Sequence record: MN871441.1
DNA length: 64,000 nucleotides
Reading direction: 5' to 3' (one strand)
This document shows positions 17,089 to 47,424 of this stretch, piece by piece. The number at the start of each line of letters is the position of its first letter. The first letter of the stretch is position 1. The notes under the pieces were generated by a model. It was not told the origin of the DNA and did not search any database. It saw only the letters and a list, made by a program, of their open reading frames with translations. The position numbers and the translations under genes are program-made.

Positions 17089-17184
17089 CGAACGTAGTGA
17101 GACGGCGTAGCCGCCTGTTCGCTTCGCTCACCTTTCTAATTATAGATTTTCTATATAAATACTTATAGAGACTTTATAGTTTGA
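17089..17184. repeat. Bipartite GC-hairpin plus 50-bp palindrome element, copy 1
   Basis: Shared with 47331-47424; 21-nt arms around TAAATACT. Confidence 0.85.
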
Positions 17185-17273
17185 TTGCAAGTGAAACTAT
17201 CTAAGATTAAGTCTTGAAGAACATCATGTTACAATGTACTAAATAAGTATAGATCTATAAGGGATTTTTAACT

Positions 17274-18059
17274 ATGACAAACAAAACCACGATTGACAAG
17301 AGTGTACTTCTTGCTGCTATGCAGAAAAACGTACAGCAGACCAATGTGACTTTATCAGATGGTAGAAAGATCAAGGTTCGTGCTTTCTTGATGAAAGAAA
17401 TGAAACTGTTGATGTTAGCTAATGAAGCCAATACTGGAATCGATGATGCAATCATCCAAATCGTAAAAAACTGTATCCTAACTGATAATGTTGATGTAGA
17501 CCTTTTACCTGTGTTTGACTTGGAAGCAGTTTATCTAGCTTTGTATAAGTTATCAAAAGCAAGTCCAACTGTCCCGGTTATGTTTACTTGTGCCAACGAA
17601 ATTCTCGATGAAGATGGTAATGTTCAATATGACCAATATGGTGAAATTATTCGTTGTGGCTCTGATATCAAAGTAAACGTAAACTTGAATAACGCTAAAT
17701 TGTCGGATGCACCAGATAACAAAATTGTTCTGAATGAGAACATGACAGTTTATATGAGATATCCTAATATCAGCGAGGTTGAATATTTCAACGTAGAAGT
17801 TGAGTCCGACTTGTTTAACTTAATCAATCGCTGTATTGACGAAGTTCATATGGGAGATCAGGTTGTTAAGGTTGGTGTTGATATTCCGTATGAGGATATT
17901 TCTGAAATTATGGAATACGCCGATTCAGTTGCTTTGACAAAAATGGGTAAATTTGTAACATCCCTCCCCCAACATACTCTAAATATACCTGTAAAGTGTA
18001 AAAAATGTGGACACCAAGAAATTGTTACACTTAAAGGGGTAGAAAGTTTTTTCGCATAA
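17274..18059 (+). CDS. 26: Baseplate hub assembly chaperone gp26
   Basis: KVRAFLMKEMKLL, MRYPN and C-terminal CKKCGH....LKGVESFF. Confidence 0.9.
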   Translation: MTNKTTIDKSVLLAAMQKNVQQTNVTLSDGRKIKVRAFLMKEMKLLMLANEANTGIDDAIIQIVKNCILTDNVDVDLLPVFDLEAVYLALYKLSKASPTVPVMFTCANEILDEDGNVQYDQYGEIIRCGSDIKVNVNLNNAKLSDAPDNKIVLNENMTVYMRYPNISEVEYFNVEVESDLFNLINRCIDEVHMGDQVVKVGVDIPYEDISEIMEYADSVALTKMGKFVTSLPQHTLNIPVKCKKCGHQEIVTLKGVESFFA

Positions 18060-18223
18060 CGCTTGTTAACCATACCATATACGATCATTTTAATACGGTA
18101 TATAAGCTTAGAAAAGATGGATGGAGCCATTCGGACCTTGAGGATATGACCCCCTTTGAATTTGGTGTTTATGTTCACCTCTACCTAAACGATCTTAAAG
18201 AACAGGCGAGAGAAAAGGACTAA
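18047..18223 (+). CDS. 51: gp51-type C-terminal domain without its own start codon (probable -1 frameshift extension of gp26)
   Basis: -1 frame reads FFRITLVNHTIYDHFNTVYKLRKDGWSHSDLEDMTPFEFGVYVHLYLNDLKEQAREKD*; resembles the short gp51 family. Confidence 0.75.
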   Translation, partial: FFRITLVNHTIYDHFNTVYKLRKDGWSHSDLEDMTPFEFGVYVHLYLNDLKEQAREKD

Positions 18224-20094
18224 GTGATGATTGACAAGCAGAAACAGAACGAACTTGATAAATCGGTTCGAGATGTCACGGATGCTATGGATATTGTTTC
18301 TGATTCGATGCTTAAGTTGGACGACAAGACAGAAAAGTTGTCCAACTCAACAAAAGACCTTACCGCGTCTTATGATATTACATCTGATTCCAGTCTGGAA
18401 GTCGCACAAGAACAAGAAAAATTAGCGAACCAGATAAAAGGTGCCAGAAAGGATAATAAGCGTAGTAATAAGGTTGAAAACGAATTAGTTTCAGCTAGAC
18501 GAAAGCAACTGGAAGACATTTTAAATAATAAACAACCCCTAGTGGATTATAGCCAAGGTGTAAAAAGTCAGAACCCAGAACAGGGGGAAACTGCCAAACC
18601 TATGCAGGAGGACACTAGGGAGACTTTGAAAGAATTTATACAACGCGAAGTTGGTGATCGTCGTGAATTTGTGGAAAATTTCAAAGAAGAAAATCAAAAA
18701 ACTGGTAAATTTGTTCGAGAGATAGCAAAAAAAGCTAATATAGTTGACCGAATGAAGAAATCAGAAACATCAGCAACAGCGAAAATACTTGGTCATACTA
18801 TGTCCGCTGGTATCGGTATGGTTACTGGAACCATAAACGATTTGTTATCAACTATTCCCGGTTATAATCAGGCCGCTAATGCAACGAAGTTTGTTGGTGG
18901 GTCTATTATCGATGCACATAACGCACGTAAGGAAAAGAAATTAGATGCAAAAGCGAATGCGGCTTATGAAGAGAAGAAGGCTGATGCTACTTCTAGATTC
19001 CAAGCAGATCCCACAAAACAAACCNGAAGACAAAGTAAAAACAGATAGAAATAACCAAGANCAAAAGAAAGAAAGACAAGAAAATGGAAGAGAACGAGAG
19101 AACAACGAAAAGCGTCATAAAAGCTTAATCGATGTTCTTAAAGGTATCCAGATGTCCATGTTGATCGGTAAACTTGATTGGTGGTGTTGGNTTTGTTCTT
19201 AGTGGNCTTGTTTCTGGTATCAGTGTTCTATCTGGTGCGGTTCTTGGTTTGGCNCCTATGATTGCGGGTGCCCTATCTGCTGCTGTTGGTGGTTTAATTG
19301 CTAAGTTTTCGGGGTTGTTTGATAAGATACCGGGATTGGGAAGTAAGACCCCTACACCATCGTCTGGCTCTGGTGGTGTTAATCCAAACGATGTGTCTAA
19401 GGATCCTAAGAAGTCTCCGAAAACTACACAACCGGATGGAAAGAAGCCACCTACACCAGAACCAAGACCGGGGCAACCAGCAAAAATTGAGACACCTAAA
19501 ACAAAGACACCTACCCCTAAAGGGAAGGCTGGTATTTTGTCAAGGGCTGCTGATCTTGGTAAAAAGGGTTGGTCTGTTGCTACCGATGCTGCAAAATCAG
19601 CCTCAAAATTTATACCAAAAAGCGCATTAACTGGTGCTGGTATGGCGGTACGTGTCGCCGGTAGAGCAATTCCTTTTGTTGGTGCTGGCTTGATGGCTTA
19701 TGAGTTGTATAACTTCGCCAAAGAGAATCCAGATCTGTTGGATAAGGGTGTTGATGCTGCGAAGGGTGCTTGGGAAAGTCTTACCGGGTCATTGTTTGGA
19801 AAAGCTAATGCTAGTGAAGCTCAACCGGAATCTAAATTAGGGAATGAAATTAAGGCGGGTGAAAATGAGCCTGTATTTAAAACCCTTGAGAAAAGAAACC
19901 AAGAGGTTGAAGAATTCCGAGCTAAACAACAACGTGAAAAGGAAGAACGAGATGCACGACGTCAAGAAGGTGCGTTAATGGCTGCTGTAAATAATACCAC
20001 ATATAATAGTATGAATTCCGTTCTACCGTCTGGTTTTGGTGAATTTAGACCAGACCAACCACAATATTCATATGGGGTTCAACCGTCAACATGA
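18224..20094 (+). CDS. 29: Tape measure / hub protein gp29-like (frameshifts at Ns near 19030-19190)
   Basis: About 620 aa, helical, Lys/Pro-rich, with GRAIPFVGAGL glycine-zipper segments; lies after 26/51. Confidence 0.65.
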
Positions 20095-20654
20095 TACATA
20101 ATCAAGCACACATAACAAACATGCGTCTGGAAATCCCAGACGCAAACACAACCGCCAACTTTGTAACATCAGCTCAATCTGTTGTTCTTCCAACTATGGA
20201 AATGGATATAACAAGGGTTTCGATAAATCAGATGACGTCCGGACTTATGCCGGGTTCGAAGATCATTTACGAACCATTTAGGATTAGATTTTTGATTGAT
20301 GAAAATTTCGAATCTTATAAAGAGTTGTATCAATGGATGATCTCTGTTACTGATAGTAGAACTTTCAATTCCACCGCCCATCTACCGGGTGCTAGACCTA
20401 GATCTATTTTGGTTCATATTCTGGATAACTCAAAAAAGAATATAGTATTGACTTTCAAGTTTCATGACCCATTCCCGAGTTCATTGGACGATATAGAATT
20501 GTCCTATGTTGATGACGGAAACCCAGCCCTTATAGGTAATGTAACATTTAGTTACTCATCTATGAGTGTTGTTGGTGTAAACGATTTGGAAATCCTACCA
20601 AAACAAAACCCGGTCGGTATCGGTGCAGGACACCCATTCCAAAGTAAAATCTAA
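20091..20654 (+). CDS. 3: Tail completion / sheath stabilizer gp3
   Basis: PGSKIIYEPF...FLIDENFESYKELYQWM and ILDNSKK...F.F..PFP..L motifs. Confidence 0.92.
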   Translation: MIHNQAHITNMRLEIPDANTTANFVTSAQSVVLPTMEMDITRVSINQMTSGLMPGSKIIYEPFRIRFLIDENFESYKELYQWMISVTDSRTFNSTAHLPGARPRSILVHILDNSKKNIVLTFKFHDPFPSSLDDIELSYVDDGNPALIGNVTFSYSSMSVVGVNDLEILPKQNPVGIGAGHPFQSKI

Positions 20655-20700
20655 AGGTTCTTCGTCTTGAGGTATAATAAACAAAAAGATGAGGTACTAT

Positions 20701-24651: not shown

Positions 24652-24744
24652 GCGTGAGTGGCGAAGTTGGTTGAAACGCATCGGACTTAAAATCCGATAC
24701 TGCATAATGGCACATCGTGGGTTCGATTCCCACCTCACGTACCA
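24652..24744 (+). tRNA. tRNA-Leu(TAA)
   Basis: Cloverleaf; TCGGA-ctTAAaa-TCCGA; long variable arm; GTTCGATTCC; CCA. Confidence 0.93.
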
Positions 24745-24749
24745 AATAC

Positions 24750-24815
24750 GAGATGATAAACTCAAATTACTTTTGTTGAATGAGCTTTTTGGACGTTATG
24801 TGAGTTTATCATCTC
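24750..24815 (+). ncRNA. Candidate small RNA closed by a 15-bp perfect stem
   Basis: GAGATGATAAACTCA / TGAGTTTATCATCTC. Confidence 0.45.
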
Positions 24816-24840
24816 TCAAATTCAATATGAGATGCTTAAT

Positions 24841-24978
24841 ATGAACGTATACATCAGAAATTACATGTGTGGAGTCCTTTGGGGTAGTATCTTCAACGAA
24901 GAACACTGTAAAGGTAAATGTGTAAAGATTATGCGCGGTAAACATTTGAAGCCTTTCTATCAAAAATCGAGATATTAA
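24841..24978 (+). CDS. Small hypothetical protein (45 aa)
   Basis: MNVYIRNYMCG...KSRY*, abutting the next ORF. Confidence 0.45.
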   Translation: MNVYIRNYMCGVLWGSIFNEEHCKGKCVKIMRGKHLKPFYQKSRY

Positions 24979-24979
24979 A

Positions 24980-25369
24980 ATGAAAGTGAAGCTTGGGGCT
25001 TACAACCTTAATGAAAAAAGTTCTTTGGTTAATACGAACGGATTAAAATTCATTTTGAATGAACAAGTTATAGATGAATTTTCTAAAAAACTACCTGTTC
25101 TAATCAATTTTGGTCAAAAATGTTTTAACATTGATAATGCTAAAGATACTCCGGATCCGGTTGGTATTCTTAATTCCATAGAAACTTACAAGAAAGATAA
25201 TATCATTATTGTTACTGGTGATGTAGAAATAACCAATGACAAAGTATATGATGTTCATGGGTGCCTTCCTTCTTTTTGTGTCCGATCTTTAGCTATTCGT
25301 AACGGTGATACTTACAAAGTTGGAGAAATTATTGCATGGGATATGGAAATATATGAAGGTTTATCATGA
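24980..25369 (+). CDS. Hypothetical protein
   Basis: 129 aa ORF. Confidence 0.7.
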   Translation: MKVKLGAYNLNEKSSLVNTNGLKFILNEQVIDEFSKKLPVLINFGQKCFNIDNAKDTPDPVGILNSIETYKKDNIIIVTGDVEITNDKVYDVHGCLPSFCVRSLAIRNGDTYKVGEIIAWDMEIYEGLS

Positions 25370-25764
25370 ATAAACATGATATTCATCTCATTGGTATTAG
25401 TAAGTTTATCAAGAAAGGTCTTACTGTGGTTCAATCAAGTTTGATCTTCAAACAAACCAGTGAAGAATGGAAAAATATCCATGGTGTTGATGTAGACAAG
25501 ATTTATTGCTATATTAACAACGAGGGAAAGGATATCTACGCAATTGGTAGACTTAGATCCTGTTGCGGACCTTGGTTGAGTGTTAGTTGTCGGTCTCTCC
25601 GTAAAAAAGGTTATATAGCATTTGACTTTAACGATGAAATTGAGATACCATATGGTTCAGGGATGAAAACTGCTTATAGGGTATTGTTTTCTGACACCCC
25701 TAAATACGAGTATGATGAAGAAGCTAGACATCCAGTCGCTTACTTCGAAAAATACTTCAAATAA
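25366..25764 (+). CDS. Hypothetical protein
   Basis: 132 aa, ATGA overlap with the previous ORF. Confidence 0.7.
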   Translation: MNKHDIHLIGISKFIKKGLTVVQSSLIFKQTSEEWKNIHGVDVDKIYCYINNEGKDIYAIGRLRSCCGPWLSVSCRSLRKKGYIAFDFNDEIEIPYGSGMKTAYRVLFSDTPKYEYDEEARHPVAYFEKYFK

Positions 25765-25808
25765 AAGTTAAACATCCTTTCTAACTGTGATATGATGTTT
25801 ATATAAAT
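25760..25808 (+). promoter_or_regulatory. tRNA promoter, 49-bp direct repeat copy 2
   Basis: Near-identical to 24601-24649; directly precedes tRNA-Arg. Confidence 0.8.
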
Positions 25809-25809
25809 T

Positions 25810-25886
25810 GCGCTGTTAGCTCAGTTGGATAGAGCAACGTTCTTCTAAAGCGTGGGTCACTGGTTCGAATCCAGTACGGCGCACCA
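25810..25886 (+). tRNA. tRNA-Arg(TCT)
   Basis: Cloverleaf; anticodon loop ctTCTaa; CCA. Confidence 0.95.
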
Positions 25887-25970
25887 CGGGATGTGGTGAA
25901 ATTGGCAGACACACTAGATTTAGGTTCTAGCGCCATAGGCGTGACGGTTCGAGTCCGTCCATCCCGACCA
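25887..25970 (+). tRNA. tRNA-Leu(TAG)
   Basis: CTAGA-ttTAGgt-TCTAG; variable arm; CCA. Confidence 0.93.
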
Positions 25971-25971
25971 A

Positions 25972-26047
25972 GCGGGTAAGGTGTTTATGGATACATGCAA
26001 GCCTTCCAAGTTTGAGTAGACCGGATCGTTACCGGCTACCCGCTCCA
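25972..26047 (+). tRNA. tRNA-Gly(TCC) with an atypical T arm
   Basis: GCGGGTA/TACCCGC acceptor; ctTCCaa; T loop ATCGTTA; CCA. Confidence 0.85.
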
Positions 26048-26058
26048 AGATTTAAAAT

Positions 26059-26128
26059 TGATGTGTTACAGCTATCAGCTCACCGTTGAAAGAATACGGA
26101 TAAGTCGGCTCGACTAAAGAACATATCA
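26059..26128 (+). ncRNA. Candidate ~70-nt structured RNA
   Basis: Terminal stem TGATGTGTT/AACATATCA enclosing hairpins CCGT/ACGG and AGTCG/CGACT. Confidence 0.5.
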
Positions 26129-26131
26129 TTT

Positions 26132-26208
26132 GGCCCCTTAGCTCAGTTGGTTAGAGCAACCGACTCATAATCGGTTGGTCACTGGTTCGAGTCCAGTAGG
26201 GGCCACCA
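26132..26208 (+). tRNA. tRNA-Ile2(CAT) (lysidine type), possibly Met
   Basis: GGCCCCT acceptor and overall sequence resemble enterobacterial ileX; ctCATaa; CCA. Confidence 0.88.
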
Positions 26209-26230
26209 AATTTTTGATGAGAGCTATATT

Positions 26231-26425
26231 ATGTCTGGTATAAAATCCATAATTGAAAATTGGTCAGTTGGTGATGGTATAATCCATTGGAAGAATGGAC
26301 GCCATAGTTTAGTAGTCTTTGGGTTTGCTCCAAATGGAGAACCTGCCTTTAAGTTTAAAGGTAAGAGTAAACTTACATCAGTAAGACAGATCGAAAAATC
26401 CATAGTTAATGCATATATTCTATAG
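26231..26425 (+). CDS. Hypothetical protein
   Basis: 64 aa, GAGAG RBS. Confidence 0.6.
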   Translation: MSGIKSIIENWSVGDGIIHWKNGRHSLVVFGFAPNGEPAFKFKGKSKLTSVRQIEKSIVNAYIL

Positions 26426-26434
26426 TTGTAAGCT

Positions 26435-26582
26435 CTCACGAATTTAATGGTCGTTGACCTTACGATAATAATGAAGCGATACAGAGTCCCATCGCTTCTA
26501 AAAATATCAAAAGGGATGTTGATGCGCGTATGTAGCCGGGTTATAATGACCAAGATTCATGAAGGGTGAAAGACCACCCTAA
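26435..26582 (+). ncRNA. Candidate ~150-nt multibranch RNA
   Basis: GAAGCGAT/ATCGCTTC and AGGGTG/CACCCT hairpins; long-range TGGTCGTT/AATGACCA. Confidence 0.5.
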
Positions 26583-26589
26583 ATATCAT

Positions 26590-26667
26590 AGCGGGGTGGA
26601 GAAGTCAGGAGTTCTCGCCAGACTCATTATCTGGAAATCGGTGGTTCAAATCCACCTCCCGCTTCCA
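26590..26667 (+). tRNA. tRNA-Met(CAT), initiator-like 5' end
   Basis: AGCGGGGTGGAG start; CCAGA-ctCATta-TCTGG; CCA. Confidence 0.88.
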
Positions 26668-26668
26668 A

Positions 26669-26744
26669 TGGCGTGTAGTTCAGTAGGTAGAACAGCGGAC
26701 TGTTAATCCGTATGTCGTGGGTTCGAATCCCACCTCGCCAGCCA
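26669..26744 (+). tRNA. tRNA-Asn(GTT)
   Basis: GCGGA-ctGTTaa-TCCGT; CCA. Confidence 0.94.
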
Positions 26745-26750
26745 AATTCT

Positions 26751-26841
26751 GGATGTTCGGCTACGATGGCGGTGTAGCGGCGGACTGTAAATCCGTTCCC
26801 TCTGGGTAAACAAGTTGGTTCGAATCCAACAGCATCCACCA
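26751..26841 (+). tRNA. tRNA-Tyr(GTA)
   Basis: GCGGA-ctGTAaa-TCCGT; variable arm; CCA. Confidence 0.92.
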
Positions 26842-26844
26842 AAT

Positions 26845-26990
26845 AGAAGAAGTTAGAAGACGTTCTGATAAAATCCTCGGAGACGATGCCCCCTTGCGGT
26901 TTTAAACCGTTACGGATAAGCACGGGGTAATCCAAATCAACCATTATAGGGATGTGGTCATCTGGTATGTAAAATACAGTTGGTTTGGAA
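26845..26990 (+). ncRNA. Candidate stable RNA between tRNA-Tyr and tRNA-Pro
   Basis: No ORF; CGGT-tttaa-ACCG hairpin; CCAAATCAAC/GTTGGTTTGG stem; internal AACCA at 26939-26943. Confidence 0.4.
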
Positions 26991-26995
26991 CTTTT

Positions 26996-27071
26996 CGGTG
27001 ATTAGCGCAGTTGGTAGCGCGTCTGGTTTGGGACCAGAGGGTCACAGGTTCGAGTCCTGTATCACCGACCA
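26996..27071 (+). tRNA. tRNA-Pro(TGG)
   Basis: TCTGG-ttTGGga-CCAGA; CCA. Confidence 0.95.
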
Positions 27072-27349
27072 CTTAGCACAAAGAACGGGTAACGACGTAT
27101 GCCCCGGAATAAGCCAGCCATAGAGAATCTGGATATCCTGAAACGTGCCTTTAGGTTTCAGGCGGGATTGGTAGTATAAAGACGATATGGTAACTACTCC
27201 TTGACAAGCAGGGTTGAACTTGAGGTAACTGTCCTTTACCAAACAACGAACAGATGGACAAAATCAGTTGAACGTCCTTCCTCCTTGTGATAGCATGTCA
27301 ACTACATTAGGATATAATCACAGTCTAACGATCCTGATTATAATCCGCT
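27072..27349 (+). ncRNA. Candidate ~280-nt structured RNA
   Basis: CCTGAAAC/GTTTCAGG and TATAATCA/TGATTATA hairpins; long-range GCGGGATT/AATCCGC and TTGACA/TGTCAA. Confidence 0.55.
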
Positions 27350-27425
27350 GCCGAATTAGCTCATCTGGTAGAGCACAGCCTTTGTAACGCTGGGGTGGTC
27401 CGTTCGAGTCGGACATTCGGCACCA
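27350..27425 (+). tRNA. tRNA-Thr(TGT)
   Basis: Cloverleaf; ttTGTaa; CCA. Confidence 0.93.
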
Positions 27426-33845: not shown

Positions 33846-36800
33846 TTAAGTTATCCGCTGTGCCAATGTTACGTTCCAAGAACCCCAACCGTCGCCGTTT
33901 TGGGAATTTGCTCTAGAAACACCCATCAGACGCCATGTACCATAGTTACAAGCAACCATATTAGTACCTTCCGCGTTCGAGAATGCAATCTGAGTACCTT
34001 GGAGAACAGTCCCCGGACCTTGTGGACCAAGGTTGGATTTGACTGTGACCATCGCATATGAACCAATATCCATATTGCCGCCGCCATTGACGACTGATCT
34101 CAGTATTACACCATCTGGAATTGGGTTACTTGGTGAATAAACTCGTTGACCTACGTCGTGAACACCACCATTAGCGTTAACAGAACCTGCTATTCCGGTA
34201 TTACCATTGTTATCAATAGACATTCTGAGTTTAGTTTCACCACCGGCACCATTACTTGATGTAAATCGAAGTTGACCGTCTGTGTTCATGTAAATCATTG
34301 TTGCCCAAAATCCGGGACGATGAAATTCTAGTCTGTTATTATTATTGCTAATGATAGAGGCATAACCACTATTAACACCTACAGATCCACCAACCTCAAT
34401 GTTTCCATTAACACTTAGGGAACCAGACATTGTTCCGCTGGTTGTGTTGAAACCCGTACTCATAGTAACCACACCGTTCGAACCTATCATAAATGGTTGG
34501 AGATTCCATACACCATCTTGATAACGATGGATACCAAGGTTACCATTAGATAGATCCATACCCATCCCCCAAGACAAACCTTGTTTGTTTTCGAACGGGG
34601 TGAATATCAGACCAGCATTATTGATAACCCGGAAAGATGGTGCAGCAATTCTGTCTTGGTTAGCAATAATCTCGCCATCATTAAACGTCATTACACGTAT
34701 GTTTGCAGTGTCTCCAGATCTTCTTACATATATGTATGGGTTTATACCAGAAGATTCTTGTGCTCCAAGCCCAAATACCCTAGTACCATCTGCACCACTT
34801 ACAAACATTGCAGTTCTTGCACTTAACTGATTTTGAAGTTCTGTTACTGTTGGGCTAACTTGTATTATCTGGTTTTCGCCTGAGTTACCATGTTTTAGTT
34901 TAAATGTGTTTCCTTCTGCTAATATATGAAATCTAGCATTAGAACCATCTTGAAAACTAATCGATGCACCATTATTAATCATAACAGCATTCTTTATGGT
35001 TGCAGTAGTTACCGCTCCAGTTAGAGTGCCACCAGACAGATTTAATTTAGTATTAAGTAAATTATCTGTTTCAGTTTTTGTGTATGCATTAAAATCACCA
35101 GCAGAAGGTTTATTACCAGTGTGATATATGGTGTAATCGTTACTTCCAATCCTTACCATTGGGTTATTTTTGCTTTCAAGATATACAGTACCAGTCTTAG
35201 CAGCCAGATATATATTGTTGCTCGCGGCGTTGATATATTCATCTGTTGCATCCCAACGAATTGCACCAGTCATGATACCACCAGACAGATTAAGCTTTTT
35301 GTTAAGCTCTGTGTTTATCTGTGCAGTTGTTAATGTACCAACGTCGGCGGCTGATGGTTTATTGCCGGTATGATATATGTCATAATCTGTGTTATTAACT
35401 TTAACCTTCGGATTGATAGTTCCAGAAGCTAATGTCAATCCAGATGGTGAGCGTTCGACGTAATAATCAGAACCACTACCAAGAGTCAATCTAGTGGTGT
35501 TGCCAGAGTTAAATCTAACATCCCCAGTTACAGTACCACCAGTTAAAGACAACGCCCCAACATCAGCGGAAGTAGGTTTAAACTCTTCGTTATAGTCACG
35601 ATACCAAGGCTTCCACGCACCACTTGAATATTGTGCTCTAGACCAAACTTCGGACGAGTTATATACCCAATATTTTTGAATAACGCCAGCGGAAGTAGTA
35701 ACAATAAGGTTACCAGCTTTCTCAACTGGATAGTTCAAACTAGTTAATGCTTTAGCGTTAGCAACTTGGCTATATATACCAGCGGTTTTAATATCGTTGA
35801 GGTTATCTGTATCTCTCAGTGTGATAATAGAACTAAAACCACCAAGAGCAACACCATCAACATATGCCTTGTTTGTTAAATGCATTGCCAACGTCGGAAC
35901 TTGGTTATTTGATATAGTACCGGTTGCATTAAAGACAGTTTCCCCAGTTACAGTTCCCGAACCATTTGGACGAATCACAACACCAGATGAACCACCACCA
36001 ATAATTGTTCTATTATCTAAATAGATTCCTTGGTTTGCATTACCGGAATATTGAAGTGCATAACCAGTTGTGGTTACAATAAATTTCTCTGCATTCACAT
36101 TACCGGTTTCGATCTGTACTTTCTTACCTGCATGGGTAAATTCAGCACCAACATCTCTACTTATTCTTAGTGTACTAGTGTCAGCAGTCGAACCATCAGA
36201 CCCTTTGCGATATCTAGAAGCTAAGAACAAAGTACCTTCATATTCACCGGTTGTGGTTGTGTTTGTTGCTTGACCTATAATTCTAGACAACTGATCGCCA
36301 CTATGGGGATCATATCGGTTTGTAGCACCAACTCTAAAACTAACCTCACCTATTGTGTATGGAATACCAGCAGCAACACCATCACGATATTTTTCCTTGG
36401 TATAAGATACGTAAGGATAAACAGAGTCGTCATTAGTAGAGTTATTGTGTCTTAGAATACCAGTTCTGTATGTGTTTACCTGTTCCCACACACCAGTCGG
36501 TAACCATGGTTGCCAACCTTCAACTGCATTAATCCATACCCTTGTAAACTCTCTTGGTTCTACAAATCCACCGACTGTTACCCAGTTACTGAATTTCTGA
36601 ACAGTCAAGTTATCGAAAGATCGTTGTTTAACCTCAACAATACCCGTATGAGTAGTTGCAGTTGCGGTATTGTCAGTTCCATTAGCCCAGTTACCATCAA
36701 CTGTAAAAACACCGTTGGTCTTAATTAGGTTGAAGTCACGAACACCACCGGTTACTGTGATCGCGTTGGGACTATCACCAACACCAAGACCCATACCACC

Positions 36801-42727: not shown

Positions 42728-43099
42728 TTATTCTACACTTTCGTCGGCTGGTGTCAATATGTTTTTAGAAATAAAATTTATTACCCCATCATCTGGACGT
42801 TCAAACAACCAAATGCAATTTAGATATCCCAGTGAACTGGAGTCTTCATGGTCAATGCGACCCACTGGGATCTCACTGTCGTAACAAAACCCTTTGTAAT
42901 CATCACATACATAGAAACCACACTGTTTACTGTAAACAATACCAACACAAACGCAAGATTCGGGCCAAAGTTCAACCAGACCATCATTGNTTACAGTTAC
43001 AGCAAATTTGTCATATTTGTGTTCGTTTACTGGGAGGTCGAGAACCAAATTATCAATTATAACAGGAATGTTAAAACTCTTAAAAGGTGGTGTATACAT
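42728..43099 (-). CDS. Hypothetical protein
   Basis: 123 aa ORF. Confidence 0.7.
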   Translation of the reverse strand: MYTPPFKSFNIPVIIDNLVLDLPVNEHKYDKFAVTVXNDGLVELWPESCVCVGIVYSKQCGFYVCDDYKGFCYDSEIPVGRIDHEDSSSLGYLNCIWLFERPDDGVINFISKNILTPADESVE

Positions 43100-43326
43100 T
43101 TTAGTACCNNNNNNNTNNATGANCNNNANNNNCNNTAACNNNACNNNTNGTAANCANTNNNNTNNATANANNCNANANNNTNNGGAANNNTNAAANNNCA
43201 NANCNNNNANNNNNTNNNNNNNNNNGNNNNNANTTCNACNNGNNNANCNTNGTTNANANNNANANCAAANNNANCNTANATNTNNACGAGAACTGATGAT
43301 ATATATATNATCAGTTTACATAAAAC

Positions 43327-43356
43327 AAAAGGGATCCTCAACGGGATCCCTTTTTT
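43327..43356. terminator. Terminator, GGGATCC family copy 3
   Basis: AAAA-GGGATCCT-caac-GGGATCCC-TTTTTT at the end of asiA. Confidence 0.8.
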
Positions 43357-43863: not shown

Positions 43864-44060
43864 AATCACCAACCCTCTGATTTCTTATGCTTTTTACCAC
43901 GAATTTTCTTGGAATTCTCTTTCTTGTCCTTCATAACAGAAGGACGATTGAAATTATGTTTAGCTACTGGATTCATTTTCTATTCCTTATGTTATGAAAG
44001 AGGGGGCGAACCCCCTTGATGCGGTTATAGTCTCATAACCAATACATGTTTGCAAGTGGT

Positions 44061-44510
44061 TTATACTGGGAGAATCCAGAAAAGACCACAGAAGAATCCA
44101 GAAACAGCAGAAATAAGAGCCAAAAGAACCACAACAGTGATTACATTGATTCGTTTGTTAGCAGATTCGCGCTCATTGTCGGTCATTGCTTCCCACTTCC
44201 GAATTGACTCTTCCAGATCTTTAACCCCATCAATACCNCTCTCGATGTAGATNANTGTCATTGGGTTAGCATANGCTTTACCAAGATAACCTACCCNNTC
44301 TTTNGCATAAGANANCATGGTNAGATANTGGAACATCACCATNACGATAGCGCCAANGATAATAGGNCCATACATAGTGGATGCNGGGATTGATGCAAGG
44401 GCTGCTGCCATGAAGAACAGGCCCCAAGTAACAATTGCATTCGATTTAACCCGTTGGGTTTCTTCATGAATACGTTGTTTTACTTTTGTCACACGAGTTT
44501 CAATAGACAT
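44061..44510 (-). CDS. Membrane protein
   Basis: Three hydrophobic segments; starts MSIE. Confidence 0.75.
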   Translation of the reverse strand: MSIETRVTKVKQRIHEETQRVKSNAIVTWGLFFMAAALASIXASTMYXPIIXGAIXMVMFXYXTMXSYXKXXVGYLGKXYANPMTXIYIEXGIDGVKDLEESIRKWEAMTDNERESANKRINVITVVVLLALISAVSGFFCGLFWILPV

Positions 44511-44538
44511 TTCATTTTCCTTTTTTACAAAACTATAT

Positions 44539-44967
44539 TTAGAGGAACAACCAAGATGATACCATTACAGGAACACCAAATAAACCAAGATAAAATACAA
44601 AATCACAAAAGTATATTACTATTCCTGCAATAGTAATTCGTAGATTAAAGTTTGATGTATTTTTATAAATATGAAGGTATTTCCCAACGTTATTACCGCA
44701 AAATGAGTATAGCATACACATAGATAATGGATGTTTAAACTCTTTGCCATAATTGGGGCGCTTAATCCATACAACTACCATGAACACAATATCAAGGAGA
44801 ACATAAAATATGGCACATAACAGTATGTATAGATTGACATCCGGCACAAACCCACAACCAACAAGTACACTTGCTACCAATGCCCCCATACANGATGGGA
44901 TNANCGCAGGNAACATCCCGTTTGTTTCTGTTTCTGCCTGTCTCATAATGTTTATTTCTATAGACAT
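44539..44967 (-). CDS. Membrane protein
   Basis: Three hydrophobic segments; starts MSIE. Confidence 0.75.
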   Translation of the reverse strand: MSIEINIMRQAETETNGMXPAXIPXCMGALVASVLVGCGFVPDVNLYILLCAIFYVLLDIVFMVVVWIKRPNYGKEFKHPLSMCMLYSFCGNNVGKYLHIYKNTSNFNLRITIAGIVIYFCDFVFYLGLFGVPVMVSSWLFL

Positions 44968-44968
44968 T

Positions 44969-46315
44969 TTATTTACTATCCTTCAATTTATTTTTCAAAG
45001 TTGTTAAATCTTTCAAATATTCTTTTTTTGAGTTTGTACTTTTCCAATAAGCTAGGTCTTTTTCTGCTTGCTCATATTCTTTAACCAGCTTTTCTACTTC
45101 ATCTTCTGTCATGTTAAAGATTGGAAGACCAACCACCTTATCAGCATAAACAGAAAGCTCTGGATCCAGAAGAGTTTTAACTTGTTGGATCATAGATTTC
45201 TTCGGTTGGTTATAACCGATTTTCCCATCACGAGCCAGACGAATAAATTCTGCCTTCGCTTTCAATTCCGGGATAAGAANAGTCAGATTTTCAATCATAT
45301 TTTCAATGCGACGGTCAACNACNGTCATGCGATAATCNACAAATTCNCACACNAGTTGNCTNGTATTGTCGTATTTTCNCAGNTCCATATCCCCNGTAAC
45401 CATGTTNGAGTTTGGACCGATTACGTTGATATTCTGATAGATATTCTCAGATAGAGAGAACTGTTTCATGATATTTTCATGAGAAGTATCAAAATCACGT
45501 TTCAAAGTGACTCGGAATGTAAAATCACCGTCACCTTCAATCTCATCATAACTAACAATCTGATCTTTTTCAATGAGATTATTCAAAATCGCCACATATT
45601 TTATTCGATTGAAACTAACTGGGATTTCTGTGATCAAAAGCTTGGTTTTACCTTGAAGTTCATAAACCCCTTCGTTTGTCCATTGTTCACCTGATGTATT
45701 AACGTTCCCAATAAAAGAAGGGAACTTGATTTCTGGATCTTTACATTTACCAGTCTTAACATAAGAAATACATTCATCAATAACGCTGTGAATGTCATGT
45801 GGTAGNATATGAGTCGCGTAACCAGTTGCAACACCATGAACCCCATTGATNAGAACAAACGGAATNACNGGNAGATAAAATTTTGGAATAGAATAAGAAT
45901 CNATCTCACTTGGTAAAACTAGATCCAAATCTTTAAANAGTAGGTCAAAATTATCATCCANCTTACCGAAGATNTAACGTGGTTCNGCTGCNGCTGGGTT
46001 CTGTCGTGAACCAAAGTTACCGCGACCCTTGATAACTGGGAAGTTGTTTGCGTATTCAGTTGCCATNCCNGCAAGAACATCATACCCNCTTGCTTCNCCA
46101 TGGGGATATCCATAGTCGGAGATAACACCACAAAGAAATGCGGATTTCTTGAAGTCCTTACTTGCGTTTTTGATTGTGGAGTACAAAACAAAACGCTGAG
46201 ATGGTTTGAACCCATCTACCATGGAAGGTAATGCCCGGTTGACGATGGTATAAAATGTATATTCTTTTGCTTCGTTGTGAATATAACTTGAAATAGTACG
46301 ATCTACAAATTTCAT
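44969..46315 (-). CDS. 52: DNA topoisomerase II medium subunit gp52
   Basis: RALPSMVDGFKPSQRFVLY; YPH.E; GRGNFGSR; GVATGYAT; ITEIP. Confidence 0.97.
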   Translation of the reverse strand: MKFVDRTISSYIHNEAKEYTFYTIVNRALPSMVDGFKPSQRFVLYSTIKNASKDFKKSAFLCGVISDYGYPHXEAXGYDVLXXMATEYANNFPVIKGRGNFGSRQNPXAXEPRXIFGKXDDNFDLXFKDLDLVLPSEXDSYSIPKFYXXXIPFVXINGVHGVATGYATHXLPHDIHSVIDECISYVKTGKCKDPEIKFPSFIGNVNTSGEQWTNEGVYELQGKTKLLITEIPVSFNRIKYVAILNNLIEKDQIVSYDEIEGDGDFTFRVTLKRDFDTSHENIMKQFSLSENIYQNINVIGPNXNMVXGDMXLXKYDNXXQXVXEFXDYRMXXVDRRIENMIENLTXLIPELKAKAEFIRLARDGKIGYNQPKKSMIQQVKTLLDPELSVYADKVVGLPIFNMTEDEVEKLVKEYEQAEKDLAYWKSTNSKKEYLKDLTTLKNKLKDSK

Positions 46316-46344
46316 ATCATTCCTTATTTTAATTTATTTTATGT

Positions 46345-46394
46345 ATCATAACACATATGAATATAAACTGTAAAGCCCATCAAAAGACGGGCTT
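46345..46394 (-). promoter_or_regulatory. Terminator overlapping the early promoter of gene 52
   Basis: Minus strand AAAGCCC/GGGCTTT stem, then TTTACA-N18-TATGAT with TGTG. Confidence 0.65.
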
Positions 46395-46398
46395 TGTT

Positions 46399-46803
46399 CT
46401 AACTTACCATTCGACCATGGATGATAAATTTGTTTCGGATCTTGCCAGTCAACTCATGACCATTATTCATCTGTCCGTATTCTTCAATCCCAAGGAGGTG
46501 TCGGGCTTGGCTATATTTAAGGAAATATAGTTTTACGGTCTTTCCTGTCATCAGATAATCATGAACATCTTTAGCCTGTCCGGTACGTGGTTTTCGAAGT
46601 CGGATCATGGTTTCACCAAAACCACGTTTTCGCTGTTGATTTCCAACATGAGTCATATAAACAACAGAACTAGCGGGGGCAGAAATGAAGTAAAACCCCT
46701 CTTTCGTTACATCACCAGTTTCGTTAAGGTTGATACCATCAAAGTTACCAACAACAACCGCACCAGACTTGACAAGCTCCTTTGTAGTTAAATTCTTTTT
46801 CAT
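46399..46803 (-). CDS. ndd: Nucleoid disruption protein Ndd
   Basis: L...GAVVVG, GFYF and HVGNQQ.KRGF motifs; syntenic with gene 52. Confidence 0.8.
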   Translation of the reverse strand: MKKNLTTKELVKSGAVVVGNFDGINLNETGDVTKEGFYFISAPASSVVYMTHVGNQQRKRGFGETMIRLRKPRTGQAKDVHDYLMTGKTVKLYFLKYSQARHLLGIEEYGQMNNGHELTGKIRNKFIIHGRMVS

Positions 46804-46994
46804 TATTTCACCATATTAAAAATTAAAAACAAGACAATACCAAGACCCAATATTTTAATAAACCAACCGGTGGGAGTGGTCATCATTGATTCCGGGTGAT
46901 ACATTTCTTCTGGTATATCTCTTTTATTGCCATAACGGTCGTGAGTATCCATCAGCCTAGGGCCTTCATCCTCATCGTATGGTTGATATCTCAT
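46803..46994 (-). CDS. Small membrane protein
   Basis: C-terminal TM segment. Confidence 0.65.
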   Translation of the reverse strand: MRYQPYDEDEGPRLMDTHDRYGNKRDIPEEMYHPESMMTTPTGWFIKILGLGIVLFLIFNMVK

Positions 46995-47239
46995 TCACCC
47001 ACCCGAAAAAATTTTCCGTCTCGAACCAGTACATGATCCAAATTATAAATGATGAACCCTTTGGTTTCATATGGGGTAACAACACGATATTCGACGTCTT
47101 TGGTATCGTGATTCACATGAAAGGAATATACCCAGTCTTTAACCTTTAATTGAAGGCTTGTATAACCAGACACAAACGGTATTACCTCCTTATAGCCTTC
47201 ACTTTTCTTAATGTTTACGAAACTCTCTATAGAAACCAT
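46991..47239 (-). CDS. Hypothetical protein
   Basis: 82 aa, GAGG RBS. Confidence 0.65.
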   Translation of the reverse strand: MVSIESFVNIKKSEGYKEVIPFVSGYTSLQLKVKDWVYSFHVNHDTKDVEYRVVTPYETKGFIIYNLDHVLVRDGKFFRVGE

Positions 47240-47261
47240 GATTAAACCTCGTGTATGGTGT

Positions 47262-47323
47262 CTAGAATCAATTCCTANNNAGAATACATAACATTGTANG
47301 AGATAACNAGGAATTGATTCTAG
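47262..47323. repeat. Inverted repeat
   Basis: CTAGAATCAATTCCT ... AGGAATTGATTCTAG. Confidence 0.75.
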
Positions 47324-47330
47324 NNANATT

Positions 47331-47424
47331 GGTGAGCTTTAGCGAACCGGCTACGCCGTACTCGTTTCACTCGTTCTAATTATAGATCTTCTATATAAAT
47401 ACTTATAGGAGATCTATAATTTGA
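47331..47424. repeat. Bipartite GC-hairpin plus 50-bp palindrome element, copy 2
   Basis: Palindrome co-oriented with copy 1; GC module is the reverse complement of that in copy 1. Confidence 0.85.

What the first reader, a model, noticed from the sequence alone, without database searches (positions are those of the whole stretch)
17089..47424. Two-copy origin-like element whose GC-rich module is flipped between copies
Copies at 17089-17184 and 47331-47424, 30 kb apart, share a 50-bp palindrome: TCTAATTATAGAT..TCTATA-TAAATACT-TATAG.AGA..TATA.TTTGA. Arms pair at 19/21 and 20/21 counting G-U, with the same T-T mismatch in both. Each is preceded by a ~44-bp GC-rich module (GTGAG..CGGCGTAGCCG..TTCGC..GCTCACC) that is inverted in copy 2 relative to the palindrome. 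The centre is a T4-consensus TATAAATA, unlike the phage's usual CTAAATA, and in copy 2 it points against all neighbouring genes. Copy 2 adjoins another 15-bp inverted repeat. Candidate roles (inference): replication origin or single-strand initiation signal, packaging/recombination site, or RNA primer source.
Basis: partly seen in the sequence, partly recalled or inferred. Interest (0 to 1): 0.7.

Follow-up and report, generated by a model that had tools for sequence, protein, structure and literature searches.

The report
Conserved palindrome-plus-hairpin repeat in Aeromonas phages
The two look-alike stretches are real and belong to a family of six evenly spaced, position-conserved intergenic DNA elements (an AT-rich 50-bp palindrome next to a flippable cluster of tiny GC hairpins) found only in one clade of T4-like Aeromonas phages; their job is untested, and replication-start sites are the best guess.

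Summary
The window is Aeromonas phage AsSzw2 (MN871441.1, bases 62001-126000), a T4-like Ceceduovirus deposited as a low-quality, N-peppered assembly.

"Two-copy" holds only for the window. Well-assembled relatives (CC2, phage 65, ZPAH1) carry the element at six syntenic intergenic loci, evenly spaced about 39 kb apart in CC2 (P about 0.001).

Each element has two parts:
- P, about 65 bp: a 21+8+21 palindrome plus a conserved asymmetric tail.
- G: three GC mini-hairpins with compensatory changes. The central one is GCGNAGC, the very stable DNA mini-hairpin motif known from single-strand priming sites.

G's orientation differs between lineages, and phage 65 has a P-G-P composite that could mediate the flip.

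The central TATAAATA is not the phage's late promoter (that is CTAAATA) and is absent from the phage 65 type. No sigma-70 promoter, terminator or Rfam family fits. Orientation relative to genes varies, and hairpin motifs lie on both strands, so the element probably acts as DNA.

Best guess (about 0.35): replication-initiation or primosome-loading sites. The function is untested. The N run at 43216-43225 does not affect the finding.

The parts
17049..17075 (+). Intrinsic terminator after the gp54-like baseplate gene, 13 bp upstream of copy 1. It is context, not part of the repeat.
   Evidence: Terminator scan. The gene name comes from annotated relatives.
17089..17132 (+). Copy 1, G module (CGAACG...GCTCACC). 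It holds three mini-hairpins: h1 ACGTAGT at 17092-17098, h2 CGGCGTAGCCG at 17103-17113, and h3 GCTTCGC at 17121-17127 (GCGAAGC on the other strand).
   Evidence: Covariation across 11 family members: 93% of cells paired, 5 of 8 pairs compensatory, 0 of 500 shuffles as high.
17135..17184 (+). Copy 1, P palindrome: arms 17135-17155 and 17164-17184, with the asymmetric 8-bp centre TAAATACT at 17156-17163. TATAAATA is at 17154-17161.
   Evidence: Family alignment and pair counts.
17185..17199 (+). Copy 1, conserved asymmetric tail of P (TTGCAAGTGAAACTA). Sequence similarity between copies ends here.
17239..17245 (+). CTAAATA, the clade's late-promoter motif, upstream of the gp26-like gene (17274-18059). 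It is context and lies outside the repeat.
   Evidence: the same motif lies upstream of 15 of the 25 CC2 genes examined, most of them late genes, plus the gp26-like gene; Nolan et al. 2006 for phage Aeh1.
47262..47323 (.). 15-bp perfect inverted repeat (47262-47276 and 47309-47323) with a 32-nt spacer, between copy 2 and the start of the next minus-strand gene (46991-47239). It is specific to this locus and not part of the family.
   Evidence: N-free version in CC2.
47331..47374 (-). Copy 2, G module in reverse orientation relative to P. Its central hairpin reads CGGCTACGCCG at 47348-47358.
   Evidence: The same flip is seen in CC2, AS-zj and ZPAH1; the phage 65 ortholog is unflipped.
47375..47424 (+). 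Copy 2, P palindrome: arms 47375-47395 and 47404-47424, centre 47396-47403. It is the most perfect arm pairing in the Ceceduovirus group.
47425..47439 (+). Copy 2, asymmetric tail (TTTCAGATGATACTA). Its last three bases are the stop codon of the convergent minus-strand gene at 47437-47916.

Best explanation
SHOWN.
- The two stretches are members of a family of about 115-bp composite cis-elements.
- The family is confined to one clade of T4-like Aeromonas phages (Emmerichvirinae: the CC2/Ceceduovirus and 65/Ishigurovirus groups).
- The elements sit at six syntenic intergenic loci: gp54|gp26; gp35|homing endonuclease-nrdA; vs.1|alc; upstream of a DprA-like gene; the ndd/amidotransferase region; and an ORFan block.
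- In CC2 the loci are spaced evenly, 25-49 kb apart.
- Each element has a conserved AT-rich module P (21-bp arms, an 8-10 bp AT-only centre, a 15-nt asymmetric tail).
- On a fixed side of P lies a GC-rich module G made of three mini-hairpins kept by compensatory changes.
- The central hairpin is GCGNAGC with every N represented. This is the very stable DNA mini-hairpin motif.

INFERRED.
- The element works as DNA, not as RNA and not as a conventional promoter.
- The most likely role is a replication-initiation or primosome-loading site.
- Proposed steps: P melts or extrudes; the mini-hairpins on each strand resist coating by single-strand-binding protein; this marks where the priming and helicase machinery assembles. 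T4 likewise has several dispersed origins.
- The flipped G module of copy 2 is best explained by recombination between inverted repeats flanking G. Phage 65 carries such a P(inverted)-G-P composite at gp54|gp26.
- On this view the flip is tolerated because G carries hairpin motifs on both strands.
For: Family and synteny:
- BLAST finds 117 places in 21 Aeromonas phage records.
- CC2 has six full copies.
- Phage 65 has copies at the same six kinds of locus. Four are confirmed by the annotation; the DprA-like and ndd-region ones are assigned from flank similarity.
- ZPAH1 has copies at gp54|gp26 and the ndd region, plus a third near e.6.

Clade restriction:
- All 13 IMG/VR hits of a specific pattern lie in phages 65, CC2 and AS-zj.
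- Two true hits occur in metagenomes and none in 185,579 bacterial and archaeal genomes.

Selection:
- P is an island of conservation in otherwise unalignable intergenic DNA.
- ZPAH1's P is 94% identical to CC2's at gp54|gp26, while the adjacent gp54 gene is 74.5% identical between ZPAH1 and the window phage, a close relative of CC2.

Even spacing: P(sd of gaps <= observed) = 0.0013 and P(min gap >= observed) = 0.0046.

Structure:
- Palindrome: 86.5% of cells paired versus 29-47% when the partners are slid.
- G hairpins: 93% paired, 5 of 8 pairs with compensatory changes, 0 of 500 shuffles as high.

DNA-level clues:
- The element lies in either orientation relative to flanking genes: 2 of 6 one way and 4 of 6 the other in CC2.
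- GNA loops are on one strand for h1 and h2 and on the other for h3.
- Neither strand folds consistently better.
- GCGNAGC/CCGNAGG mini-hairpins occur at the G4, St-1 and alpha3 complementary-strand priming sites and at ssiA of RSF1010, and they bind SSB poorly (PMC13037366).
- T4 has at least five dispersed origins (PMC3016281).

Flip:
- G is flipped at the ndd locus in the CC2 group and ZPAH1, but not in phage 65.
- Hairpin loops differ between copies by inversion (AAA/TTT, GTA/TAC).
- The P-G-P composite is seen in phage 65.
Against: - There is no replication evidence of any kind.
- T4's own origins share no sequence motif. The best understood ones need a promoter plus an unwinding element, and no convincing promoter was found here.
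- P is 82% AT, which is not extreme.
- Covariation in the palindrome is weak: 2 of 21 pairs, and the shuffle controls are not exceeded. Most CC2-type copies have an internal mismatch block.
- The invariant T-T mismatch and the conserved asymmetric tail point to sequence-specific protein recognition, which could serve many functions.
- Even spacing could also arise because close direct repeats are lost by recombination. The spacing test is post hoc, and the loci of the two genera are orthologous, so it counts once.
- T4-type primase is not known to need hairpin signals.
- The element does not sit consistently at strand-switch points (annotation).
Confidence: 0.35

Rival explanations
1. A transcription-control cassette. 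P would be a regulated, possibly bidirectional, promoter or operator recognised by a phage-modified RNA polymerase or an unknown activator; these phages have AsiA but no annotated MotA. G would be an attached stem-loop. Functionally this would be a relative of the PeSL promoter/stem-loop cassettes of RB49 and phi1.
For: - The strand opposite to TATAAATA reads TTGCAA-N17-TATAAG, or xTGxAA-N16-TATAAT in phage 65 types.
- In 4 of 6 CC2 loci that strand points with the flanking genes. G then abuts the downstream gene's ribosome site, and two of these loci follow a terminator, so the next gene would need a promoter.
- At vs.1|alc a gene starts 13 nt after the tail on the other strand.
- Dyad symmetry, the invariant mismatch and concerted evolution of all copies within a genome fit a co-evolving DNA-binding protein.
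- The six elements are always intergenic.
- PeSLs combine promoters and stem-loops and sit at module borders (PMC2839356).
Against: - The consensus scan finds no sigma-70-type promoter inside P at any of three copies.
- TATAAG lacks the near-invariant final T, and the first base of the -35-like hexamer varies between copies (T, G, C or A).
- The phage's real early promoters (TTGACN-N17-GATACT) and late promoters (CTAAATA) look different.
- The centre flips or changes between lineages.
- Two of six loci would fire antisense into genes.
- Six sites are few for a promoter class.
- Even spacing is unexplained.
Confidence: 0.25
2. A recombination or cleavage site. A phage nuclease or recombinase, or hairpin processing by the gp46/47 (Mre11/Rad50-like) complex, would act on the palindrome. 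The resulting breaks would seed recombination-dependent replication or promote exchange of genome modules.
For: - P has a lox/FRT-like layout: inverted arms around an 8-bp asymmetric centre.
- Nested inversions are seen: the G module, the hairpin loops, and the palindrome centre in one phage 65 copy.
- Flanks of the vs.1|alc locus are replaced between close relatives.
- Concerted evolution implies frequent exchange among copies.
- One public contig joins the left flank of copy 1 to the right flank of copy 2.
- Several homing-type endonuclease genes are annotated in CC2.
Against: - No integrase or recombinase is annotated in CC2.
- Gene order across the six loci is conserved between genera, so the sites do not visibly drive rearrangement.
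- In phage 65 the centre is nearly symmetric, which would remove directionality.
- The joining contig starts with an adapter and may be a PCR or assembly chimera.
Confidence: 0.15
3. A structured RNA: a small RNA gene, or an RNase III-type processing hairpin within mRNAs.
For: - The 21-bp arms would make a long hairpin. In CC2-type copies the TATAAATA strand folds better because of G-U pairs (-8 to -22 versus -5 to -17 kcal/mol).
- The G hairpins covary.
Against: - No Rfam family matches, even at E <= 10.
- In phage 65-type copies the strand preference is small and runs either way.
- G shows no consistent strand preference either.
- The better-folding strand is antisense to flanking genes at 4 of 6 loci.
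- G flips relative to P.
- Two-base-pair stems with GNA loops are stable in DNA, not notably in RNA.
- No conserved promoter or terminator brackets the element.
Confidence: 0.1
4. A selfish or neutral dispersed repeat (MITE-like or PeSL-like remnant) with no function of its own, spread by recombination.
For: - The element is multi-copy, intergenic and found in both orientations.
- Copies within a genome are homogenised.
- Partial or deleted copies appear in some assemblies.
Against: - All six loci are positionally conserved across two genera.
- P is far better conserved than adjacent coding DNA (94% versus 74.5%).
- No terminal inverted repeats were seen by eye, and no filled-versus-empty sites were available to look for target duplications.
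- No copies occur in bacterial genomes or other phages.
- The deleted copies sit in records with Ns or artefacts at the junctions.
Confidence: 0.05

Closest known systems
Bacteriophage T4 replication origins (oriA, C, E, F, G; oriF/oriG are R-loop origins made of a promoter plus a DNA-unwinding element)
   Same: - T4-type genome with several dispersed initiation sites (at least five in T4, six loci here), spread around the map.
- An AT-rich, easily melted segment.
- Some loci lie in roughly comparable neighbourhoods (tail-fibre gene 34/35, baseplate genes, the vs/rI region). This last point rests on the review's figure legend (PMC3016281) plus my recollection of the T4 map, so it is a lead only.
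   Different: - T4 origins share no sequence motif, whereas these six share about 65 bp at 83-98% identity within a genome.
- oriF and oriG need a MotA-dependent middle promoter. No convincing promoter is present here and no MotA is annotated.
- No origin activity has been measured for the Aeromonas phage elements.
Single-strand initiation signals carrying GNA mini-hairpins (complementary-strand origins of phages G4, St-1 and alpha3; ssiA of RSF1010 oriV) and the hairpin promoters of phage N4
   Same: - GC-closed hairpins with GNA triloops (GCGNAGC, CCGNAGG). Here N varies freely (T, C, A, G) while the G and A of the loop are kept.
- Such hairpins are very stable as DNA and bind SSB poorly (PMC13037366).
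   Different: - Those signals act on single-stranded replicons with DnaG, RepB' or N4 virion RNA polymerase. T4-type phages use the gp41/61/59 machinery, and no N4-like polymerase is annotated here.
- Here the hairpins sit on both strands of a double-stranded genome, next to a long AT-rich palindrome.
- Some family members have AAA, TTT or tetraloops instead of GNA.
PeSL (promoter-early stem-loop) cassettes of coliphages RB49 and phi1
   Same: - Short repeated intergenic cassettes in T4-type genomes that combine an AT-rich part with a GC stem-loop.
- They lie at module borders, next to ORFans and plastic loci.
- Repeats can recombine with one another (PMC2839356).
   Different: - PeSLs are defined by consensus sigma-70 promoters and number about 50 per genome, mostly in hyperplastic regions.
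- The element here has no such promoter, has six copies, includes loci inside conserved late-gene modules, and keeps its positions across genera.
- This phage clade has its own PeSL-like early promoters, and they look different.
Palindromic AT-centred origins flanked by GC-rich boxes, such as herpes simplex virus oriS/oriL (recalled from memory, not checked with tools)
   Same: The overall architecture matches: an AT-only centre inside a 45-150 bp palindrome, with adjacent GC-rich boxes that can form a hairpin.
   Different: The virus family and the initiator protein are unrelated. No homolog is claimed. This is an analogy of layout only.

Membership tests
T4-type late promoter | Match to the late-promoter consensus used by the phage's own gp55, placed 20-60 nt upstream of late genes | tested here: not met
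   - The clade's late motif is (C)CCTAAATA, found upstream of 15 of the 25 CC2 genes examined, most of them late genes, plus the gp26-like gene. The same motif is published for phage Aeh1.
- P has TATAAATA, which lacks the C.
- Phage 65-type copies have TAATATATTA instead.
- The motif points against the neighbouring genes at 4 of 6 loci.
PeSL / sigma-70 early promoter cassette | Near-consensus -35 and -10 hexamers with 16-18 nt spacing, plus a stem-loop | tested here: not met
   - The consensus scan finds no site within P at copies 1, 2 and 3.
- The best candidate, TTGCAA-N17-TATAAG, lacks the final T of the -10 hexamer.
- The phage's own early promoters are TTGACN-N17-GATACT.
- The stem-loop part of the definition is met: the G module.
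Intrinsic (rho-independent) terminator | GC-rich stem-loop followed by a T run | tested here: not met
   No terminator-like site is found in G or P. The terminators detected lie outside the repeat.
Known RNA families (Rfam 15) | Covariance-model match | tested here: not met
   Only tRNAs pass the gathering threshold in the window. Nothing relevant appears at E <= 10 around copy 1.
Replication origin | AT-rich unwinding element | tested here: inconclusive
   P is 82% AT in a 62% AT genome, with an AT-only centre of 8-10 bp. No stability calculation or experiment was done.
Replication origin | Initiation of DNA synthesis at the site (nascent-strand peak, autonomous replication of a cloned fragment) | not testable with these tools
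   The public runs were held only as assembled contigs and were uninformative.
Replication origin | Initiator-binding repeats or an origin promoter | tested here: inconclusive
   No iteron array is present. The conserved asymmetric tail and the dyad could be protein sites. Promoter potential is weak.
Single-strand initiation signal with DNA mini-hairpin | GC-closed hairpin with a GNA loop (GCGNAGC, GCGNNAGC or CCGNAGG) | tested here: met
   - h2 is GCGTAGC, GCGCAGC, GCGAAGC or GCGGAGC in different copies, and CCGGAGG in ZPAH1.
- h3 is GCGAAGC, GCGTAGC or GTGAAAC on the other strand.
- h1 is ACGTAGT or ACGAAGT.
- The stems covary.
- The motif definition comes from PMC13037366.
- Exceptions: AAA or TTT loops and tetraloops in four copies.
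Single-strand initiation signal with DNA mini-hairpin | Primer synthesis by a primase at the hairpin | not testable with these tools
   This needs biochemistry with the phage's gp61/41/59/32 proteins.
Tyrosine-recombinase core site (lox/FRT-like) | Inverted arms around a 6-8 bp asymmetric spacer, together with a cognate recombinase | tested here: inconclusive
   - The layout is met in CC2-type copies: 21-bp arms and the 8-bp centre TAAATACT.
- In phage 65 types the centre is nearly symmetric.
- No integrase or recombinase is annotated in CC2.
- The hypothetical proteins were not searched.
MITE / IS-derived mobile repeat | Terminal inverted repeats, target-site duplication, presence/absence polymorphism at otherwise identical sites | tested here: not met
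   - No terminal inverted repeats were seen when the two ends were compared by eye.
- No filled-versus-empty sites were available, so target-site duplications could not be looked for.
- The same six loci are occupied in two genera.
- Apparent losses coincide with Ns or artefacts in poor assemblies.
- None occurs in bacterial genomes.

The most novel reading that the evidence does not exclude
The six elements are the replication origins, or the primosome or sliding-clamp loading sites, of this phage clade. That would be the first set of T4-type phage origins defined by a shared sequence. Very stable GNA DNA mini-hairpins on both strands would act as SSB-resistant landmarks beside a meltable palindrome, and a dedicated phage protein that co-evolves with the palindrome type (CC2 type versus 65 type) would recognise it.
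Probability: 0.3. Interest if true: 0.8.

Novelty: new variant of a known kind. Interest (0 to 1): 0.6.

Why it matters
How T4-type phages choose where to start replication is still poorly understood. T4's five origins share no motif, and only two are mechanistically clear. A clade in which six evenly spaced, position-conserved sites share one sequence would allow direct tests, such as mutating one site, several or all, or moving a site to a plasmid. That could define an origin or loading signal, or else a new class of regulatory site.

The element also gives a natural case of the DNA mini-hairpin motif under selection in a double-stranded phage genome. It shows small palindrome-driven inversions (module, loop and centre flips) as a recurring mode of sequence change.

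Practically, these repeats coincide with the damaged spots in two deposited assemblies, and annotators of these therapy-candidate phages should know about them.

If the elements turn out to be only recombination-homogenised repeats, the finding is a modest annotation note.

Tried and rejected
- T4-type late promoter at the palindrome centre: rejected. The clade's consensus is CTAAATA and the centre is not conserved in phage 65.
- Sigma-70 early promoter or PeSL: not supported.
- Sigma-54, sigma-32, sigma-E, MotA-box and IHF consensus matches were checked by eye and none fits. These are my own reading of the sequence, not a tool test.
- Terminator: none.
- Known RNA family: none.
- Strand-specific RNA structure: no consistent strand preference.
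- Host-derived REP-like origin of the GC module: no match to the element's palindrome pattern in the bacterial and archaeal genome collection. The GC module alone was not searched there. Within CC2 and AsSzw2 the module never occurs without P.
- A G-module pattern scan of IMG/VR returned 38 hits. By my own rough estimate that is about the chance expectation. Only those in phages CC2, AS-zj and 65 are family members.
- A degenerate tail pattern returned mostly chance hits.
- RNA evidence: four RNA-labelled runs held only low-depth contigs of relatives, so no transcript could be inferred. That used the single read-laying run, so copy 2 and read-level inversion heterogeneity could not be examined.
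- Iteron idea (GTGAG/GTGAA boxes): the boxes are not consistent across copies, so it was dropped.
- Ns as a sign of inversion heterogeneity in the loop next to copy 2: rejected. Only 5 of 32 loop positions are N, and they coincide with positions that differ from CC2. The Ns therefore look like low-confidence positions of a reference-guided consensus.
- A scan for the strongest palindromes in CC2 returned only GC-rich, terminator-like hairpins under my scoring and did not rank P.
- Looking for a trans-acting protein that co-varies with the palindrome type (CC2 type versus 65 type) was considered. It was not attempted because full proteomes of ZPAH1 and phage 65 were not fetched.

Full report
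IDENTITY OF THE WINDOW AND DATA QUALITY

The window is bases 62001-126000 of GenBank MN871441.1, Aeromonas phage AsSzw2. This is a T4-like phage (Straboviridae, Emmerichvirinae, Ceceduovirus), and the record is flagged UNVERIFIED_ORG and unannotated. The window and the record are identical letter for letter, Ns included: 2533 Ns in the window and 4658 in the record.

The Ns are scattered in patches where this phage differs from its relatives, which looks like a reference-guided consensus with masked low-confidence positions.

The run at 43216-43225 lies inside one such patch (42990-43309, 105 Ns). That patch aligns collinearly with the 99%-identical phage AS-szw. The alignment has no gap at or next to the run, and the called letters agree almost everywhere. 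It lies between asiA and a hypothetical gene, 4 kb from copy 2. It is not a scaffold break and has no bearing on the finding.

THE OBSERVATION

- The palindromes are at 17135-17184 and 47375-47424.
- Copy 1 arms pair 16 Watson-Crick + 3 G-T + 2 mismatches. Copy 2 arms pair 19 + 1 + 1. Both have the same T-T mismatch.
- A 20-mer from the centre occurs twice in the window, against none expected.
- The GC-rich module is reversed in copy 2. The 12-mer ACGGCGTAGCCG is on opposite strands. The local alignment score is 33 reversed versus 13 forward, with 0 of 2000 shuffles reaching 33. A profile of the module hits copy 2 only on the minus strand.
- The same flipped arrangement is present at the orthologous locus of independently assembled CC2, AS-zj and ZPAH1. 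It is therefore not an artefact of this poor assembly.
- Copy 2's neighbours are on the minus strand, and the adjoining 15-bp inverted repeat is real.

IT IS A FAMILY, NOT A PAIR

- BLAST with copy 1 finds 117 places in 21 Aeromonas phage records, 3-8 per genome.
- AsSzw2 itself has a third copy outside the window (record 34891-34986). That copy lacks the left arm.
- Two further copies are spoiled by the assembly. A 30-odd-base poly-A run replaces most of one, and the other is N-peppered.
- The RefSeq genome of CC2 has six full copies, at 32.1, 81.0, 122.1, 147.7, 189.9 and 219.9 kb.
- Phage 65, in another genus (Ishigurovirus), has copies at the same six kinds of locus. Four are confirmed by the annotation: gp54|gp26; gp35|homing endonuclease-nrdA; vs.1|alc; and an ORFan block. 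The copies upstream of a DprA-like gene and in the ndd/amidotransferase region are assigned from flank similarity to the window's copies 3 and 2.
- ZPAH1 has copies at gp54|gp26 and the ndd region, plus a third near e.6.
- A specific pattern for the palindrome hits only phages 65, CC2 and AS-zj in IMG/VR (13 of 13 hits).
- The same pattern gives two genuine phage 65-like contigs among 241 million metagenome records, and nothing in 185,579 bacterial and archaeal genomes.
- I found no description of these repeats in the searchable literature.

ANATOMY

Similarity between copies starts at CGAACG and ends at GAAACTA, about 115 bp in all.

Module P (63-65 bp) is the conserved core.
- It has 21-bp arms, an AT-only centre and a 15-nt asymmetric tail (TTGCAAGTGAAACTA and variants).
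- Across 18 copies, 86.5% of arm cells pair, versus 29-47% when the partners are slid.
- Only 2 of 21 pairs show compensatory change, and the shuffle controls are not exceeded.
- The T-T mismatch at arm position 3 is invariant.
- The centre is TAAATACT in the CC2 group and ZPAH1, but TAATATAT-like in phage 65, avDM6 and a metagenomic relative.

Module G always lies on the TCTAATT side of P.
- It consists of three mini-hairpins: h1 ACGTAGT, h2 CGGC-GTA-GCCG, and h3 GCTTCGC.
- Across 11 distinct copies, 93% of cells pair and 5 of 8 pairs show changes on both sides. Examples are CGGC/GCCG to CGCC/GGCG, GC/GC to GT/AC, and AC/GT to GC/GC.
- No shuffle out of 500 reaches the observed covariation.
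- The outer GTGAG/CTCAC stem is conserved but does not covary.
- The loop of h2 is GTA, GCA, GAA or GGA in different copies, so GCGNAGC occurs with every N.
- h3 reads GCGAAGC, GCGTAGC or GTGAAAC on the opposite strand.
[quoted passage not shown] They are reported at the priming sites of phages G4, St-1 and alpha3 and at ssiA of RSF1010, are discussed for phage N4 promoters, and bind SSB poorly (PMC13037366).
- Exceptions exist: AAA or TTT loops and tetraloops in four copies.

THE FLIP

- G's orientation relative to P is labile. It is reversed at the ndd-region locus in the CC2 group and in ZPAH1, but not in phage 65.
- Smaller inversions of the same kind are visible. Hairpin loops differ by reverse complement between copies (AAA versus TTT in two phage 65 copies; GTA versus TAC between the window's two copies). 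In one phage 65 copy the palindrome centre is inverted relative to the outer arms.
- At gp54|gp26, phage 65 carries two P modules in inverted orientation, 90 bp apart, around a GC-hairpin segment.
- From this I infer a route for the flip. Homologous recombination between such inverted P copies, or template switching within the quasi-palindrome, would flip G. Loss of one P would then leave either orientation.

EVIDENCE OF CONSTRAINT

- P is an island of conservation in intergenic DNA that is otherwise unalignable between genera.
- At gp54|gp26, ZPAH1's P is 94% identical to CC2's. The adjacent gp54 gene is 74.5% identical between ZPAH1 and the window phage, a close relative of CC2.
- Copies within a genome resemble one another more (90-94%) than they resemble positional orthologs of the other palindrome type (72-85%). 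This indicates concerted evolution, co-evolution with a trans-acting factor, or both.
- The six CC2 sites are more evenly spaced than random points on a circle: gaps of 25.5-48.9 kb, P(sd <= observed) = 0.0013, P(min gap >= observed) = 0.0046.
- This spacing test is post hoc and counts once, because the loci of the two genera are orthologous.

WHAT IT IS NOT

- It is not the clade's late promoter. (C)CCTAAATA lies upstream of 15 of the 25 CC2 genes examined, most of them late genes. Nolan et al. (2006) found CTAAATA for phage Aeh1.
- It is not like the clade's early promoters. Those are TTGACN-N17-GATACT, often overlapped by GC stem-loops (PeSL-like).
- The consensus scans find no sigma-70 promoter or intrinsic terminator within G or P.
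- No Rfam family matches.
- Neither P nor G folds consistently better on one strand.
- The element lies in either orientation relative to flanking genes. In CC2 the TATAAATA strand is co-directional at 2 of 6 loci and antisense at 4 of 6.

MOST LIKELY FUNCTION

These properties point to a cis-acting DNA element rather than an RNA or an ordinary promoter.

My best guess, at about 0.35, is a replication-initiation or primosome-loading site. The AT-rich palindrome would melt or extrude, and the mini-hairpins on each strand would stay free of single-strand-binding protein and mark the assembly site. This would parallel the multiple dispersed origins of T4 (PMC3016281). This step is inference, and nothing here measures replication.

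The main rival (0.25) is a regulated promoter/operator cassette.
- The opposite strand reads TTGCAA-N17-TATAAG, or TATAAT in phage 65.
- At four loci it points into the next gene, twice just after a terminator.
- At vs.1|alc a gene starts 13 nt beyond the tail on the other strand.
- The dyad and the concerted evolution would suit a dimeric regulator.

Less likely rivals:
- a nuclease or recombinase target that seeds recombination-dependent replication or module exchange (0.15);
- a structured RNA (0.1);
- a functionless repeat (0.05), which the positional conservation argues against.

PUBLIC READS

Four RNA-labelled runs held only low-depth contigs of relatives, and these mostly represent other copies of the family. 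One 408-nt contig at about 20 times the depth of the other phage contig in that run joins the left flank of copy 1 to the right flank of copy 2. It begins with an adapter, so it may be a jackpot or chimeric fragment. It remains unexplained.

VERDICT

The origin-like reading is neither shown nor excluded, although its TATAAATA component fails. The element is an undescribed variant among phage intergenic repeat and origin-like elements, and it is worth an experiment.

Noticed in passing
window 4672-63788 in patches; record MN871441.1 10129-10157 and about 151460-151600 (L001, L004): The deposited AsSzw2 genome is a low-confidence consensus with 4658 Ns. A poly-A run of 30-odd bases replaces most of one element copy, another copy is N-peppered, and copy 3 lacks its left arm although the CC2 ortholog is intact. 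AS-zj also has Ns exactly at deletion junctions inside three copies. The palindromic repeats seem to be trouble spots for these assemblies.
   Followed up: partly
L129:5340-5565 (phage 65, gp54|gp26 intergenic region, record about 102.15-102.36 kb): Two P modules lie in inverted orientation, 90 bp apart, flanking GC hairpins (GGGC-TTT-GCCC and CGCC-AAA-GGCG). Together they make a composite palindrome of about 215 bp. In the left copy the centre is inverted relative to its outer arms.
   Followed up: partly
run X18, contig laid on window 16919-17186: A 408-nt contig at word depth 66 (the other phage contig in that run has 3.4) starts with a Nextera adapter. It runs from the gp54 3' end through G and P, then continues into the right flank of copy 2 (TCATTTGATATTAAGTACTTTTTTAACAAG). 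It could be a recombinant between the two direct repeats 30 kb apart, a PCR chimera or an assembly chimera.
   Followed up: no
L143, L145, L149, L151, L155-L158, L160, L161, L169, L172, L173 (IMG/VR contigs): An unrelated conserved sequence...CCGAAACGAACGAAGTGAGTAAGGTATAAGTTGTTCGAAGAACAAC..., recurs in at least 13 environmental viral contigs. It surfaced only because it shares CGAACGNAGTGAG...GTTCG with the G module. The four of these contigs that were scanned had no Rfam hit at gathering threshold.
   Followed up: partly
L006 and L026 (CC2 1-100 kb, minus strand); same gene blocks in window 34000-64000: The early intergenic regions carry a clear promoter class, TAGTTGACN-N17-(TG)nGATACT/GATAAT. 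These are often overlapped by a GC stem-loop, so this clade has its own PeSL-like cassettes, distinct from the element studied.
   Followed up: partly
window 24652-27425: A cluster of ten tRNA genes (Leu x2, Arg, Gly, Met x2, Asn, Tyr, Pro, Thr) lies on the plus strand between the two copies.
   Followed up: no
window 17095-17100 and 47437-47439; L026:31106-31108: The element's ends supply stop codons for neighbouring genes. TAG of CGAACGTAG ends the upstream gene at the vs.1|alc locus of CC2. The last CTA of copy 2's tail is the stop codon of the convergent gene at 47437-47916.
   Followed up: no
window 43109-43352: AsSzw2 and AS-szw carry about 170-190 bp here that CC2 and most other relatives lack. 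In AS-szw this segment is annotated as a 46-aa plus-strand ORF between asiA and a hypothetical gene. In the window this segment is the N-peppered one.
   Followed up: partly
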